From contig OZ251227.1 of assembly GCA_965240325.2 (NCBI GenBank), forward strand, positions 3,038,001 through 3,102,000: a stretch of 64,000 bases of DNA. Direction: 5' to 3'. Shown one piece after another: positions 30,705 to 36,538 of the stretch (the stretch's first letter is position 1; the number at the start of each line of letters is the position of its first letter). The notes under the pieces are model-generated. The model did no database searches, was not told the DNA's origin, and saw nothing but the letters and a program-made list of their open reading frames with translations. A program made the translations under genes and the position numbers. The stretch comes from Rebecca billardiae RCC1528. Taxonomy: Eukaryota; Protista; Haptophyta.

Positions 30705-32648
30705 TCACCCGTGCTGCGCCGACGATACCCGCCCGCTCACGCTGCGGCTCCCAGCGGCGGTGCCGAGCCGATCGAGCGCCGCCTCCTTTGCGCCGACGCA
30801 CACGAGCACCGTGCGGTCGGCCGCCCACGCGCACGGCGGCGGAGCGGGCGCGGCGGCGGGTGGCTCGGCGCCGTCGGCCGCCTCCTTGTCGCGCAGCCGC
30901 GCGACGATGGCGGCGGCGAGCAGCTGCGCGGCCGGCTCGAGCGCGAGCGCCTCGGGCACGGGCTGCGCGCCGCCGCCGCCGGCGCCGGCGGGCCGCGCGC
31001 CCTTGAGCCCGTGCGGCGGCGCGCCCGGCGCGTCGGCCGCGCGCCCGAGCTCGAGCAGGTGCAGGCACGGCAGCAGCCGCATGTAGTGCGGCGCGCCCTC
31101 GGCGGAGGGCGGCGCGTGCGCGTCGCACAGCGCGAGTAGCGTGCCGCCCTCGGCGCGCTGCCGCATGATCGCCACCTGCAGCAGCTGCTCCGCGTGCGCG
31201 TCGCGCGCGCACGCGTCGGACAGGATGGCGAGCGCGATCGTCGAAGGCGCGTCGAGCGCGACCGCGGACGCGGCGCGGCGCAGCGCGCCCAGCGCGGCGC
31301 GCGCCTCGAGCGCCTTGGAGACGGCCTCGCCGACGGCGCTGGCGAGGTGCGCGTCCGCGTCCGCGAAGATGAGCTCGACGTGCGCGCGCGTGTGCGCGGG
31401 CGGCAGCCGGCCTTGCGCCGACGAGGGCGGCGGCAGCGCAGGCCTGCACTCGAGCGCGCGCGCCGCGTACTTTGCGACCGCGCGCGCCGTCGCGAGCGCG
31501 CCCGCCTCGTCCGCCGCGCACGTGCCGCGCGCGGCGGCGAGCGCGGCGCCGTCGGGCGCGGCGCGCGCGCGCGCGCGCTCGGCGTACTCCGCGCTCACGC
31601 CGTCCAGGGCCTCGAGCGCGGCGCCGACGGCTGCGTGCCACGCGCCGTCGAACGTCGCCCAGCTCGGCGGGAGCGCGACGTCCGCCACCGAGCCGGGCAG
31701 GAGCGGGTGCGCGCCCTCGCCGCCGCCGCCCTCGCCGCCCGCGCCCGGCGGGTGCCGCAGCTCGGCGGGGACCGGCACGATCGGCAGCATGCAGATTGCG
31801 CCCGTGCGCTCCGTCGCGTGGCACAGGGCGAGCGCCAGCTCCTCCCGGCACACCGCCGAGCGCACCCACGGCGGCGTGACCAGCGCGAGCGTGAGCAGCG
31901 GGCGCGAGCCGTCGAACGCCGAGTACAGCTCGTGCTGCCACGACGTGCCCGCGCGCAGCCCGCCGCCCACGTCCAGGAAGACGCGCAGCCCCGGCCGCGC
32001 GGCGAGCAGCAGCTCGCGCACGGCGCGCGCGCACGCGGAGAAGGCGTGCGAGTACGATATAAAAATCTCGTAGCTGCCATCCGCCGGCGCGGGCGTGTCG
32101 GCCGCGTGGTCGGGCGGCGCGCCGCCGTGCGCGCCGCCGACCGAGCGCGCGTCGTGCGGCGCGCGACCGGCGCCCGCCGCCGCGCCGCCCTCGCCCGCCG
32201 CGGCCGCCGTCGCCGCGGCGGCCGCCGCGGCCTCGTGTGCGAGCGGCGCGCTCAGCGCGAAGCACGCGGGCGCGAGCCGCGCGTGCAGCCCGGCCAGCCC
32301 GCCCGGCGCCGCGCGCACGTCGTGGTACTGCACTGTCGCCATGAAGCGCGGCAGGTTGCAAGACTCAATGTAGACGGGCTCCAGCTGCGGCGCGGCGGCG
32401 CGGGGCGCGGGGGACGCTACGGCCGCGCCCGGCGTGCCGCTCGTGCCGAGCGTGCGCCCCGCGCCGCCGCCGGCCGCGCCGCCGCGCCGCGCCGCCGCGT
32501 TTGCCGCGCGCGCCAGCAGGAACGCGTGGTTGAACAGCTCCACGCACAGAGGGTCTCGCAGGAAGGCCGGGCTGAGCAGGGGCACGACGCGCACGCACCG
32601 CCGCACGACGGCGGCGATGGCCTCAGAGGTGCCCAGCCCCGCACCGCC

Positions 32649-32692
<44 letters not shown>

Positions 32693-33029
32693 GCGGCGCG
32701 TCGCTCGGATCGGCGGGCGGCGTCTCGGCGCGCGCGTCCACGTGCGTCCACGCCTCGTCCACGCGGAGCGCGGGGCGGTCGAGTCGCAGCAGGTGCTCCA
32801 CGGCCGCGCGCGCGGCCGCGTCGGCGGGCGCGCCGCGCGCGCACACGAGGAGCACGTCAATCGGCTCGGGCTCGGCGGCGTGGCGCAAGCGCTCGCTCGA
32901 GCGCAGCTGCGCGCCGGGCGTGGCGGCCGCGGCGCTGGCCGGCTCGGCGCGGCCGCGCGCCGGCCGCGGCGCCGGCGCGGCCGCGCGCCGGCGCGGCGCG
33001 CTCGGCGCGGACGCGGAGGGGCGGCCTGG

Positions 33030-34859: not shown

Positions 34860-35005
34860 GCTCTCGAGCGGGCGGCCGCCGGCGGCGGGCGGCTGCGTTT
34901 TTTTGCCGCCGCTCCGGTTGCTGGTCAGCTTGGAGTCCGGGCGGGCGCCGAACGGCCTAAAGCCGAGCGGGCCAAAGTTTGGCCAGCCGGGCCGGAGCGG
35001 CGACA

Positions 35006-36538
35006 ATGTCGTCGTTGCCCGGCGAGCGGCCGCGCTCGCCGAAGCGAGAGCCGCCGGGCGGCGGCAGCACGCGCGCGCTCGCAGACCTGAGCGCCGCGCA
35101 GGCCAGCGCGCTGCTGCACGCGCTCGAGCTGCCGCCCGGCGCGGCCGCCGAGCTGCGCGCGCTCGGCGTGGACGGCGCGATGCTGCAGGGCATCGAGGAG
35201 TGCGACCTGTTCGAGCTCGGCGTCGCGCACGCCGCCGCGCGCTCGGCGGTGCTCGCGCAGCTCCGGCGCTACGCGCTCGATGGCGTCGCCGACGCGCACG
35301 TCGCGCCGCAGCCGCCCCGAGCGGCCGATGGCGCACGTCCGGGCGGCGGCGCGGCGGACGGCGTGGGCGGCGCGCCGGCGGGTCTGGACACGCGCACGCG
35401 GATGGAGCTCGAGCTGCTCGCCTCGCGCGCGCGCGTGCAGGGCGGCGCGCGCGTACTGCTCCGCGCGCCGACCCTCGACTTCAGCCACGACCGCCTCGAG
35501 ACGAGCCGCCACCTGCACGCCGCCCTCCACCTGCTCGAGCGCTCCGGCTCGCCGGTCGCGCGGCTCGGCCTCGCGAGCAACGGCAGCTTCGTGCGGGGCA
35601 ACCTGCGCGCGCTGGCCGGCGCGATCGCGGCGAACGGGCAGCTCGTCAGCCTCGACCTCGCCGACGACGAGCTCACCGACGCGCACGTCCCGCCGATCGT
35701 CGCCGCCGTCGCAGCGAGCGCGCGGCTGCGATCGCTCAGCCTCGAAGCAAACTGCCTCGGCGACACGGCCATCCCGCCGCTCGTCGGCGCGCTGCGCGAG
35801 CGCGCGGGCTTCGAGGCGCTCAACCTCGCGAGGAACAGGCTCACCGCCGGCGCGGCGGACGAGCTGGGCGCGCTGCTCGGCGGCCCCGCGCTGAGGCTCG
35901 AGCTCTCGCTCAGCGCCAACGCGCTCACGGACGGCGCCGTGCCTGCGCTTGCGCGCGCGCTGCAGCGGTGCGGCGCGCGGCAGCGGCGCGTGCTGCGGCT
36001 CGCCTCGGCGGGGCTGAGCGACGCGGCGGTGCCGCCGCTCGCGCGCGCGGCGACGCACAGCGGCGTGCACCTCGAGCTCGACCTCGCCGACAACGCGCTG
36101 AGCGACGCGGCCATCCCGCCGCTCGCCGACGCGCTCACGGCCGGCGCGGCGGTGCGCTCGCTCAACCTCGCGAGGAACCGGCTCACGGACGCGGCCGCGC
36201 CGCTGCTCGCGGGCGCGCTCAAGGCGGGCGCGCGGCTGGAGGCGCTGCACCTGGAGGAGAACCAGCTCACGGACGGCGGCGTGCCCGCGCTCGTCGAGGC
36301 CATCACCGCCACCAGCTCCGCGCTGACTGAGCTCGGCGTGCTCTCGCGCAACCGCGGGCTCAGCGTCGCCGGCAAGGCGCGGCTCAAGCGCGCCGCGCAG
36401 CAGGTGCTCAGGGGCGCGCACAGCCCGGCGGCAAGCGGCCGCGCGGGGAGCCCCGCCCGCGCAGCGCCCCGTTCGAACGGCGCCGCTGCGCACCCGGCCG
36501 GCCACGCCGCCCGTCGGCGCGAGCTGGTGCTCGAGTGA
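35006..36538 (+). CDS. SAM domain + ribonuclease-inhibitor-type LRR protein (510 aa)
   Basis: SAM-like segment LSAAQASALLHALEL..AAELRALGVDGAMLQGIEECDLFELGV...RSAVLAQL. About 9-10 repeats of ~28 aa with LxxLxLxxNxLxDxxxxxL (e.g. LRSLSLEANCLGDTAIPPL, LEALHLEENQLTDGGVPAL). Confidence 0.85.
   Translation: MSSLPGERPRSPKREPPGGGSTRALADLSAAQASALLHALELPPGAAAELRALGVDGAMLQGIEECDLFELGVAHAAARSAVLAQLRRYALDGVADAHVAPQPPRAADGARPGGGAADGVGGAPAGLDTRTRMELELLASRARVQGGARVLLRAPTLDFSHDRLETSRHLHAALHLLERSGSPVARLGLASNGSFVRGNLRALAGAIAANGQLVSLDLADDELTDAHVPPIVAAVAASARLRSLSLEANCLGDTAIPPLVGALRERAGFEALNLARNRLTAGAADELGALLGGPALRLELSLSANALTDGAVPALARALQRCGARQRRVLRLASAGLSDAAVPPLARAATHSGVHLELDLADNALSDAAIPPLADALTAGAAVRSLNLARNRLTDAAAPLLAGALKAGARLEALHLEENQLTDGGVPALVEAITATSSALTELGVLSRNRGLSVAGKARLKRAAQQVLRGAHSPAASGRAGSPARAAPRSNGAAAHPAGHAARRRELVLE

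What the first reader, a model, noticed from the sequence alone, without database searches (positions are those of the whole stretch)
30705..36538. Head-to-head Macro-TIR-TIR-TIR and SAM-LRR pair: a candidate split SARM1/Thoeris-like NAD+ signalling module
Seen: the two ATGs (34859 on -, 35006 on +) are 146 bp apart. One gene has a macrodomain-like N-terminus plus three TIR-like domains, and TIR2 retains the FISYSH box and a C-x-E-E-L helix Glu. The other gene has a SAM domain plus RI-type LRRs. Known: TIR domains with this Glu cleave NAD+ when oligomerised, and SARM1 uses SAM domains for that oligomerisation. Type II Thoeris pairs a TIR with a macrodomain that binds the TIR-made ADPR derivative. 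Plant paired NLRs are arranged head-to-head. Inference: an LRR sensor with a SAM polymer scaffold could activate a TIR NADase whose product is read or erased by the fused macrodomain. Caveat: three other divergent pairs of unrelated genes in this window have similarly short spacers.
Basis: partly seen in the sequence, partly recalled or inferred. Interest (0 to 1): 0.85.

Follow-up and report, generated by a model that had tools for sequence, protein, structure and literature searches.

The report
Macrodomain–triple-TIR gene beside unrelated LRR gene
One gene of this algal pair belongs to a little-studied family, found from bacteria to sea urchins, that fuses an ADP-ribose-binding macrodomain to TIR immune-enzyme domains, but nothing shows that its leucine-rich-repeat neighbour works with it.

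Summary
The two start codons are 146 bp apart. Gene 1 (30705-34859, minus strand, 1384 aa) has a true macro fold at its N-terminus (AF2 pLDDT 94; Foldseek and profile hits are all macrodomains). A 444-aa low-complexity linker and three TIR domains follow. Only TIR2 keeps the catalytic Glu (E1007). Gene 2 (35006-36538, plus strand, 510 aa) has RNase-inhibitor-type LRRs. Its "SAM" domain could not be confirmed.

The interpretation as a split SARM1/Thoeris-like pair is not supported.
- In the only two related loci found, the orthologue has other upstream neighbours: an RNA methyltransferase and a BEACH-WD40 gene.
- Gene 2's N-terminus has no detectable homologue anywhere.
- No LRR or SAM family was among the 20 Pfam families listed for 87 relatives scanned.
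- Another unrelated divergent pair in the window has a 128-bp spacer.

What is really there is a haptophyte member of an uncharacterised Macro-TIR family. It has 660 cluster representatives. Bacteria carry Macro+TIR proteins of about 340 aa. Marine invertebrates and haptophytes carry Macro+TIR×3. It most likely acts as a self-contained protein in which the macrodomain binds an ADPR-type ligand and TIR2 cleaves NAD+. TIR1 and TIR3 would be non-catalytic assembly partners.

The parts
30705..34859 (-). Gene 1 CDS, 1384 aa plus stop: Macro - linker - TIR1 - TIR2 - TIR3 - tail
   Evidence: A single ORF. The first ATG is at 34859. In-frame GC3 is 0.88-1.00 throughout. Orthologues P0004 and P0005 align from residue 1.
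34215..34859 (-). Divergent macrodomain, aa 1-215. Family-invariant G24-D25 (the 'GD' adenine-contact motif) and the loop-2 motif P-I-L-A-A-G-N-Q-G at aa 153-161.
   Evidence: phmmer found 660 relatives. The family profile hits only macrodomains in the PDB. The AF2 model has pLDDT 94. Foldseek hits in PDB and AFDB are macrodomains. Pfam Macro itself is not hit.
32883..34214 (-). Low-complexity linker of 444 aa (Ala 106, Pro 57, Gly 54, Glu 46), including a poly-Gly run at aa 593-610
   Evidence: Composition. The linker is not conserved in length with P0004, P0005 or the metazoan relatives. Coding bias is kept in frame.
32250..32882 (-). TIR1, aa ~660-870. It is non-catalytic: Leu stands at the catalytic Glu position (C772-V-E-L775). 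A 16-Gly insert at aa 724-739 (32643-32690) interrupts it.
   Evidence: The bacterial-TIR HMM hits aa 746-786 and 822-851. hhalign to the family TIR profile gives 99.1%, E 7e-19. Catalytic column. The insert is absent from P0005 and P0004.
31590..32093 (-). TIR2, aa 923-1090, with the FISYSH box (aa 933-938) and alpha-C motif C1004-R-E-E1007-L. The predicted catalytic Glu E1007 is the codon at 31839-31841.
   Evidence: Pfam TIR_2 scores 55.6 bits against a cutoff of 28. The catalytic column is Glu in every TIR2 of the family. Codon checked.
30990..31388 (-). TIR3, aa 1158-1290. It is a degenerate TIR: LIFADAD replaces FISYSH, and Leu stands at the catalytic Glu position.
   Evidence: The metazoan TIR3 HMM hits aa 1194-1265. 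hhalign of the haptophyte TIR3 profile against the TIR profile gives 80.4%, E 1.3e-5 over 121 columns. Catalytic column.
30708..30989 (-). C-terminal tail, aa 1291-1384, partly conserved with P0005
   Evidence: Read from the sequences. No domain was assigned.
34860..35005 (.). 146-bp spacer between the two start codons (presumed bidirectional promoter and 5' UTRs)
   Evidence: Sequence read. Another unrelated divergent pair in the window has a 128-bp spacer.
35006..36538 (+). Gene 2 CDS, 510 aa plus stop
   Evidence: ORF. An identical 510-aa product is on record. GC3 is 0.95.
35078..35335 (+). Helical N-terminal segment of gene 2 (aa 25-110), proposed as SAM. Not confirmed.
   Evidence: No Pfam or PDB sequence hit and no homologue. 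The AF2 single-sequence model has pLDDT 69. SAM domains appear among non-significant Foldseek hits. Atlas features score 0.83 against SAM clusters.
35543..36370 (+). RNase-inhibitor-type leucine-rich repeats of gene 2 (aa ~180-455)
   Evidence: PDB RNase inhibitor 4peq at E 1.3e-26, and the LRRs of NLRP proteins. Pfam LRR_6 and LRR_1.

Best explanation
Gene 1 is a haptophyte member of a widespread and, as far as I could find, uncharacterised Macro-TIR family. It works as a self-contained protein. Its LRR neighbour merely shares a short bidirectional promoter region with it.

Shown:
- The N-terminal domain has a macro fold. It keeps the adenine-contacting Asp (G24-D25) and the diphosphate-binding loop 2.
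- Three TIR domains follow a low-complexity linker.
- Only TIR2 keeps the catalytic Glu (E1007).
- The same Macro+TIR core occurs in bacteria as proteins of about 340 aa. The same Macro+TIR1+TIR2+TIR3 layout occurs in echinoderms, a hemichordate, a brachiopod, molluscs and a nemertean.

Inferred:
- TIR2 is an NAD+ glycohydrolase or cyclase.
- TIR1 and TIR3 are catalytically dead partners that supply the neighbouring-TIR surfaces which TIR active sites need. The chain would thus carry its own small TIR assembly.
- The macrodomain binds an ADP-ribose-containing ligand and couples it to TIR2 activity. The ligand could be NAD+-derived, made by TIR2 itself, by another TIR, or by an invader's ADP-ribosylating enzyme.
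- The macrodomain most likely acts as a regulatory sensor, as the Macro domain does in type II Thoeris ThsA or the ARM domain does in SARM1. Less likely, it is a hydrolase that removes the product.

The confidence given applies to the identity and the self-contained reading. The sensor mechanism alone I would put at about 0.4.
For: - Macro fold and motifs.
- Family size: 660 representatives at 50% clustering.
- 64 of 87 relatives carry Pfam TIR_2 directly after the domain.
- An HMM of the bacterial TIR maps three TIR copies in most of the long metazoan proteins tested, and TIR1 and TIR2 in the window protein.
- TIR3 is linked by HMM and hhalign. TIR1 is linked by hhalign at 99.1%.
- Catalytic column: TIR1 is Gln in most metazoans and Leu, Ala or Phe in haptophytes. 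TIR2 is Glu in all. TIR3 is Glu in most metazoans and Leu in haptophytes.
- In the TIR tree, haptophyte TIR2 groups with metazoan TIR2 (SH-aLRT 83). TIR1 of both groups with the bacterial macro-linked TIR (88).
- Taxa of the relatives.
- No conserved partner gene: three haptophyte loci have three different upstream neighbours, and three bacterial loci have unrelated neighbours.
- A structural relative of the domain is fused to another NAD+-using enzyme annotated as an Arg-ADP-ribosyltransferase. This fits an ADPR/NAD-directed role.
Against: - No biochemical or expression data exist. No RNA or DNA run was listed.
- The domain misses Pfam Macro and ThsA_Macro. The canonical NAAN Asn is replaced by Ser, and the GGG loop 1 is reduced to one Gly (read by eye). 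Ligand identity is therefore open.
- Invariant acidic residues (D82, E109) could mean catalysis rather than sensing.
- The family's TIR profile scores best against MyD88 and TLR2, which are adaptor or receptor TIRs. A retained Glu does not guarantee NADase activity: TLR2 has the Glu but was inactive in the assays of bioRxiv 10.64898/2026.04.20.719644.
- The macrodomain tree does not join haptophytes to metazoans. The TIR tree is a quick search with moderate support.
Confidence: 0.7

Rival explanations
1. Genes 1 and 2 form a functional split module. The LRR protein senses a ligand, its SAM domain polymerises, and this activates the TIR NADase. The macrodomain then reads or erases the product.
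For: The genes are head-to-head with 146 bp between start codons. The LRRs are of the RI/NLR type. There are weak SAM hints. Gene 1 is indeed Macro+TIR with a catalytic Glu.
Against: - Linkage is absent in both related loci available.
- Gene 2 has no orthologue and its N-terminus has no homologue.
- SAM is not supported by Pfam, PDB sequence or fold statistics.
- No LRR or SAM family was among the 20 Pfam families listed for 87 relatives.
- An unrelated gene pair in the same window has a 128-bp spacer.
- Neither protein has an NB-ARC/NACHT domain, unlike paired NLRs.
Confidence: 0.1
2. Gene 1 is a non-enzymatic TIR adaptor or scaffold, like MyD88. The three TIRs only nucleate TIR-TIR assemblies, and the macrodomain recruits the protein to ADP-ribosylated targets.
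For: The family TIR profile scores best against MyD88 (E 8e-17) and TLR1/2/6/10. Two of the three TIRs lack the catalytic Glu. The best-scoring fold matches include binder-type macrodomains such as macroH2A1.1, PARP9 macro 2 and PARP14 macros.
Against: The Glu is conserved in every TIR2 from haptophytes to metazoans, and in 18 of the 20 bacterial TIRs examined at that column. This argues for selection on catalysis. Animal TLR-type TIRs were recently reported to make cADPR (bioRxiv 10.64898/2026.04.20.719644), so likeness to TLR or MyD88 does not exclude enzymatic activity.
Confidence: 0.15
3. The architecture is as in the best explanation, but the macrodomain is a hydrolase, not a sensor. It degrades the TIR2 product or removes ADP-ribose from a target. 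This would limit self-damage, like the DarG macrodomain opposite DarT, or terminate the signal.
For: Invariant acidic and polar residues (D82, E109, R84, C89, W90) run from bacteria to eukaryotes. The profile matches hydrolase macrodomains AF1521, YmdB and MacroD1/2. A structural relative is fused to a protein annotated as an ADP-ribosyltransferase.
Against: The MacroD-type catalytic Asn (NAAN) and the Gly-rich loop 1 are not conserved (read by eye). The closest fold matches include non-catalytic binders. A hydrolase cannot restore NAD+ that a TIR has consumed.
Confidence: 0.2

Closest known systems
Type II Thoeris (ThsB TIR + ThsA with Macro domain)
   Same: A TIR enzyme is combined with a macrodomain that recognises an ADPR-derived molecule. 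This is described in bioRxiv 10.1101/2024.01.03.573942 and PMC11204291, and summarised in bioRxiv 10.64898/2025.12.03.692087.
   Different: Here both domains are in one polypeptide, with no transmembrane effector part. The macrodomain does not match Pfam ThsA_Macro. No two-gene operon is conserved in the bacterial relatives. The eukaryotic forms have three TIRs.
SARM1 (ARM-SAM-SAM-TIR NADase)
   Same: A eukaryotic TIR with a catalytic Glu is joined to an N-terminal nucleotide-binding regulatory domain in one chain. The TIR profile matches SARM1 and TIR-1 TIR domains (E 2e-5 and 7e-6).
   Different: Gene 1 has no ARM and no SAM domain. The proposed SAM lies on a separate, unlinked gene and is unconfirmed. 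The family's TIRs are closer in sequence to MyD88/TLR and to bacterial or plant TIRs than to SARM1.
Uncharacterised Macro-TIR(x3) proteins of marine invertebrates (e.g. Acanthaster planci XP_022091418.1, Lingula anatina XP_013419885.1, Saccoglossus XP_006820675.1) and of Pavlovales sp. CCMP2436 (KAJ1623223.1)
   Same: The domain order is the same: Macro-TIR1-TIR2-TIR3. The pattern at the catalytic position is also shared, with Glu lost in TIR1 and kept in TIR2. The closest relatives are P0004 and P0005, at 52-53% identity in the macrodomain.
   Different: The window protein has a 444-aa low-complexity linker and poly-Gly inserts. Its TIR3 has lost the Glu that most metazoan TIR3 domains keep.
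Bacterial two-domain Macro-TIR proteins (~340 aa; e.g. MGV8122405.1, Candidatus Xenobiia)
   Same: They have the same macro-like domain (36-45% identity) followed directly by a TIR with the catalytic Glu.
   Different: They have a single TIR and no linker. They sit in variable, mobile-element-rich neighbourhoods. PADLOC models match only the TIR part.
Plant paired head-to-head NLRs (e.g. RRS1/RPS4 type)
   Same: Divergent orientation with a short shared promoter. One partner has a TIR and the other has LRRs.
   Different: Neither gene has an NB-ARC/NACHT domain. The linkage is not conserved. The resemblance is positional only.

Membership tests
Macrodomain superfamily | Three-layer alpha/beta/alpha macro fold | tested here: met
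   The AF2 model has pLDDT 94 and pTM 0.91. The listed Foldseek PDB and AFDB matches are macrodomain-containing entries, with probability 1.00 and TM by target 0.65-0.76.
Macrodomain superfamily | Adenine-contacting Asp in the N-terminal G-D-[IL]-[TS] motif, and the Gly-containing loop 2 that binds the diphosphate | tested here: met
   G24 and D25 are invariant in 88 relatives. The P-x-L-A-x-G-x-Q-G motif is conserved. Both blocks align to GDIT and FPAVSAGIYG of AF1521.
Macrodomain superfamily | MacroD-type catalytic residues (Asn of NAAN; Gly-rich loop 1) | tested here: not met
   The family has S-A-F-P in place of N-A-A-N and only one Gly before helix 1 (alignment and secondary structure, read by eye). 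Hydrolase activity of the MacroD type is therefore doubtful. Another mechanism is not excluded.
Macrodomain superfamily | Pfam Macro (PF01661) or ThsA_Macro (PF20016) above the gathering score | tested here: not met
   No Pfam hit on aa 1-245 at E<=1. Neither family is among those listed for 87 relatives at E<=1e-3.
TIR domain, enzymatic class (TIR2) | TIR domain model above threshold | tested here: met
   PF13676 TIR_2 scores 55.6 bits against a cutoff of 28, over aa 932-1028.
TIR domain, enzymatic class (TIR2) | Catalytic Glu in the alpha-C helix (position +3 after the Cys/Trp of the [WC]xxE motif) | tested here: met
   C1004-R-E-E1007-L. The column is Glu in all TIR2 copies. That the +3 position is the catalytic one rests on my knowledge of the plant WCLxEL motif, not on a structural superposition made here.
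TIR domain, enzymatic class (TIR2) | NAD+ cleavage activity | not testable with these tools
   Needs an enzyme assay.
TIR domain (TIR1, TIR3) | Homology to TIR over the whole domain | tested here: met
   TIR1: hhalign 99.1%, E 7e-19. TIR3: hhalign 80.4%, E 1.3e-5 over 121 columns, and the metazoan TIR3 HMM. Neither was folded. TIR3 is the weaker case.
TIR domain (TIR1, TIR3) | Catalytic Glu | tested here: not met
   TIR1 has Leu775 at that column and TIR3 has Leu (hhalign).
SARM1-like NADase | ARM-SAM-SAM-TIR in one chain, with SAM-driven octamer | tested here: not met
   Gene 1 has no ARM or SAM. The candidate SAM is on gene 2 and is unconfirmed.
SAM domain (gene 2, aa 25-110) | Five-helix SAM fold or a SAM_1/SAM_2 profile match | tested here: inconclusive
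   No Pfam or PDB sequence hit. The single-sequence model has pLDDT 69 and pTM 0.44. The best Foldseek hit is Shank2 SAM, but at E 2.8 and TM 0.3. SAMD9 and SAMD5 appear at E 3.6-4.1. VIA-align gave no SAM hit. Atlas features score 0.83.
Type II Thoeris | Two-gene operon: ThsB TIR plus ThsA with a Macro domain and a membrane effector part | tested here: not met
   Here there is a single fused chain with no membrane part and no ThsA_Macro match. PADLOC ThsB models match only the TIRs of bacterial relatives, and weakly. Neighbours vary.
Paired head-to-head NLRs | Both partners carry an NB-ARC/NACHT NTPase, and the pairing is conserved | tested here: not met
   Neither protein has an NTPase domain. 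Pairing is absent in L001 and L002.
RNase-inhibitor-type LRR (gene 2) | 28-29-residue RI-like repeats matching RI/NLR LRRs | tested here: met
   PDB RNase inhibitors at E 1e-26 to 1e-22, and NLRP LRRs at 1e-15 and weaker. Pfam LRR_6.

The most novel reading that the evidence does not exclude
The Macro-TIR family is an ancient single-chain counterpart of Thoeris, shared by bacteria, haptophytes and marine invertebrates. TIR2 makes an ADPR-derived nucleotide that the fused macrodomain of the same or a neighbouring molecule binds. This would give a self-amplifying or self-limiting switch for NAD+ depletion or signalling during infection. The dead TIR1 and TIR3 would pre-form the composite active site. 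In haptophytes the long low-complexity linker might add condensate-driven activation. If so, this would be a TIR-nucleotide immune pathway conserved across kingdoms and not yet studied.
Probability: 0.25. Interest if true: 0.75.

Novelty: new variant of a known kind. Interest (0 to 1): 0.5.

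Why it matters
TIR domains that make nucleotide signals, and macrodomains that read them, are known as separate proteins in bacterial Thoeris. Here the two are fused in one chain. The fusion is conserved from bacteria to algae and invertebrate animals, and the macrodomain is too divergent for Pfam to flag.

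The consistent pattern of one live TIR beside one or two TIRs that have lost the catalytic Glu gives a directly testable model for how tandem TIRs build an active site within one molecule. It also offers a eukaryotic entry point to ask whether macrodomain-read TIR products exist outside bacteria.

The negative result matters for the scan as well. Head-to-head spacing of about 130-150 bp in this genome is not evidence of a functional pair.

Tried and rejected
- RNA and DNA sequencing runs for the locus: none was listed. Expression and co-expression could not be examined, and read laying was not used.
- Homologues of gene 2: the whole-protein search found only LRR-level matches at 29-39% identity. 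The N-terminal segment found only itself. The metagenome scan found nothing.
- SAM test by Pfam on fragments, PDB sequence search, a single-sequence AF2 model, Foldseek against PDB and Swiss-Prot and VIA-align wide: all non-significant.
- Word-indexed search with the TIR region (aa 660-1345) returned only P0005. Low-complexity words probably swamped the candidate list.
- More haptophyte orthologues from metagenome contigs: none.
- Genome-contig scan with a bacterial member: none.
- Conserved bacterial partner gene: two loci each have a 135-aa gene upstream, but the two proteins are unrelated.
- PADLOC: only the TIR parts match, and no known defence system contains the macro-like domain.
- Literature: no paper uses 'Macro-TIR' or its variants. 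The TIR surveys I read do not mention the fusion. Burroughs et al. 2015 (NAR) and Gerdol et al. 2017 (ecTIR-DC families) could not be read. They might describe this family, so prior description cannot be excluded.
- Pseudogene reading of gene 1: rejected. The 1384-codon frame is intact with coding bias and is conserved in three haptophyte sequences.

Full report
**The locus.** The window is very GC-rich (60-82% around the finding). It has no tRNA or Rfam match. The closest relative of gene 1 comes from the haptophyte Pavlovales sp. CCMP2436.

**Gene models.**
- On the minus strand a 1543-codon ORF runs from 35336 to 30705. Its first ATG is at 34859, which gives 1384 aa.
- On the plus strand the ATG at 35006 opens a 510-aa ORF ending at 36538.
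- The start codons are separated by 146 bp.
- In-frame GC3 of gene 1 stays at 0.88-1.00 in every 50-codon window. The whole length, including the low-complexity middle, therefore looks like one coding exon.
- Both relatives P0004 and P0005 align from residue 1.
- A 510-aa protein identical to gene 2 is on record.

**N-terminal domain of gene 1.** Pfam does not see it, and phmmer against PDB sequences finds nothing.
- An exhaustive phmmer search of 1.84 billion cluster representatives finds 660 relatives at E<=1e-3 and 306 at E<=1e-10.
- A domain alignment of 88 of them (A2) shows invariant G24, D25, D82, W90, E109 and G158. It also shows the motifs GDLT, VVSAFPxDY, DLRxxFSCWLS, ILCFEP and MPLLAxGxQG.
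- A profile of this alignment hits only macrodomains in the PDB: AF1521 at E 6e-4, then YmdB, PARP14, MacroD1/2 and viral nsP3. GDLT aligns to GDIT, and the MPLLAtGnqG block aligns to FPAVSAGIYG.
- The AlphaFold2 model built on A2 is confident, with pLDDT 94 and pTM 0.91.
- Foldseek returns macrodomains throughout: macroH2A1.1, PARP9/14/15, YmdB and AF1521, at E 1e-9 to 1e-7. The SPX entries in that list are macro-carrier fusions.
- In AlphaFold DB the top match is a Trichoplax TIR protein, B3S091, with 33% identity over its residues 230-417. The second is a bacterial protein annotated as an Arg-ADP-ribosyltransferase.
- The macro fold is therefore confirmed. It is a divergent clade. The NAAN asparagine is Ser, and loop 1 is reduced (my reading).

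**The TIR domains.**
- TIR2 matches Pfam TIR_2 at 55.6 bits over aa 932-1028.
- 64 of 87 full-length relatives carry Pfam TIR_2 directly after the macro-like domain. The typical bacterial member is a two-domain protein of about 340 aa.
- An HMM built from 41 such bacterial TIRs maps three TIR copies in most of the long proteins tested, at about aa 210-350, 365-505 and 560-690. In the window protein it maps TIR1 (aa 746-786 and 822-851, split by inserts) and TIR2 (aa 923-1028).
- The long proteins come from echinoderms, Saccoglossus, Lingula, molluscs and a nemertean. All are annotated as uncharacterised or simply as TIR proteins.
- An HMM of the metazoan third TIR finds aa 1194-1265 of the window protein and the matching places in P0005 and in the Pavlovales locus.
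- Profile-profile comparison against the family TIR profile gives 99.1% (E 7e-19) for haptophyte TIR1 and 80.4% (E 1.3e-5, 121 columns) for TIR3.
- So there are three TIR-like domains, the third degenerate. Neither TIR1 nor TIR3 was folded.

**Catalytic position.** I aligned all copies to the TIR HMM.
- TIR2 reads C-x-E-E in every species. In the window this is C1004-R-E-E1007.
- TIR1 reads C-x-E-Q in most metazoans and C-x-E-[L/A/F] in haptophytes.
- TIR3 keeps E-E in most metazoans but reads A-E-Q-L in haptophytes.
- That the +3 residue is the catalytic one rests on the known [WC]xxE motif of enzymatic TIRs, which is my own knowledge. The single TIR of bacterial P0006 has Glu only there.
- The family TIR profile scores best against MyD88, TLR2 and TLR1/6/10. 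Next come Cat1, Roq1, RUN1 and AbTIR, and SARM1 matches more weakly.

**Evolution.**
- A quick ML tree of TIR copies puts haptophyte TIR2 with metazoan TIR2 (SH-aLRT 83). It puts TIR1 of both with the bacterial macro-linked TIR (88). TIR3 is unresolved.
- The macrodomain tree recovers a strong metazoan clade and a strong haptophyte clade, but leaves the haptophytes in an unresolved bush with the bacteria.
- A shared origin of the triple-TIR layout is likely but not proven.

**Gene 2.**
- The LRRs are clearly of the RNase-inhibitor/NLR type.
- The proposed SAM segment (aa 25-110) has no Pfam hit at E<=10, no PDB sequence hit and no homologue.
- Language-model features point to SAM clusters at a score of only 0.83.
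- A single-sequence AF2 model is mediocre, with pLDDT 69 and pTM 0.44.
- Its fold matches are all non-significant, although Shank, AIDA1, SAMD9 and SAMD5 SAM domains recur among them. VIA-align shows nothing specific.
- My verdict on the SAM domain is inconclusive.

**Is the pair functional?**
- The only two loci with close relatives were fetched.
- In Pavlovales sp. CCMP2436 the orthologue is split by the annotators into two gene models. It spans L001 10001-13253. Its upstream neighbour is a minus-strand RNA methyltransferase gene about 1.2 kb away.
- In the Logan contig that holds the full-length orthologue P0005 (44% identity over the TIR region), the upstream gene is a co-directional BEACH-WD40 gene.
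- tblastn with gene 2 finds nothing in either locus.
- Metagenome scans found no further relatives of either gene.
- No LRR or SAM family was among the 20 Pfam families listed for the 87 family members scanned.
- In the same window a histidine phosphatase gene and a Rubisco-LSMT-like gene are divergent with 128 bp between start codons.
- Three bacterial loci show variable neighbourhoods rich in mobile elements and no conserved partner.
- No sequencing run was listed, so expression could not be tested.
I put the pair model at about 0.1.

**Most likely mechanism.**
- Shown: the macro fold with its adenine and diphosphate contact motifs; three TIRs; one retained catalytic Glu; conservation of this layout from bacteria (one TIR) to eukaryotes (three TIRs).
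- Inferred: TIR2 cleaves NAD+. TIR1 and TIR3 act as non-catalytic neighbours, since TIR active sites are known to form between adjacent TIRs. The macrodomain binds an ADPR-type ligand and gates TIR2, or is gated by it.
- A hydrolase role for the macrodomain and a purely adaptor role for the TIRs remain live rivals.

**Literature.** No paper in the searchable library uses 'Macro-TIR' or its variants. Recent TIR surveys I could read do not mention the fusion. Two older surveys that might do so could not be read.

**Verdict.** The gene is a new variant of a known kind, a TIR enzyme plus an ADPR-binding module. The paired-gene hypothesis that made the finding score 0.85 is not supported.

Noticed in passing
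window 52847-55779: Another divergent pair of unrelated genes. A histidine phosphatase (His_Phos_1) lies on the minus strand at 52847-53737. A protein with a Rubisco-LSMT substrate-binding domain lies on the plus strand at 53866-55779. Their start codons are 128 bp apart.
   Followed up: partly
window 32643-32690 and aa 593-610 of gene 1: Poly-Gly runs of 16 and 18 residues. The 16-Gly run lies inside TIR1 and is absent from both haptophyte relatives, so it looks like a recent repeat expansion tolerated within a domain loop.
   Followed up: partly
P0015, P0033, P0088 (bacterial relatives): The macro-like domain plus TIR sits at the C-terminus of long proteins that also match the type VI secretion sheath families VipA/VipB. 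Other relatives carry kinase, HSP70, FHA, CHAT, Peptidase_C25 or NB-ARC domains.
   Followed up: no
AlphaFold DB B3S091 (Trichoplax) and A0A365XW13 (bacterium): The same macro clade occurs in a 1015-aa placozoan TIR protein (residues 230-417). It also occurs at the N-terminus of a 402-aa bacterial protein annotated as an Arg-ADP-ribosyltransferase. This suggests the domain accompanies NAD+-using enzymes in general.
   Followed up: no
L001 10001-13475 (Pavlovales sp. CCMP2436, MU631667.1): The deposited annotation splits the orthologue into two gene models of 637 and 296 aa. tblastn shows one co-linear Macro-TIR1-TIR2-TIR3 gene, with frame changes that suggest introns.
   Followed up: partly
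window 21217-23016 (-), 15527-17620 (+), 59239-60792 (-): Other recognisable genes in the window: a VWA-domain protein with a CPSF6-like RSLD region, a ResIII/SNF2-type helicase, and a short-chain dehydrogenase.
   Followed up: no
window 1-4000: GC content drops to 44-56% here, against 60-82% elsewhere. Long ORFs overlap in several frames at 1039-2027. This may be a repeat or a foreign insertion.
   Followed up: no
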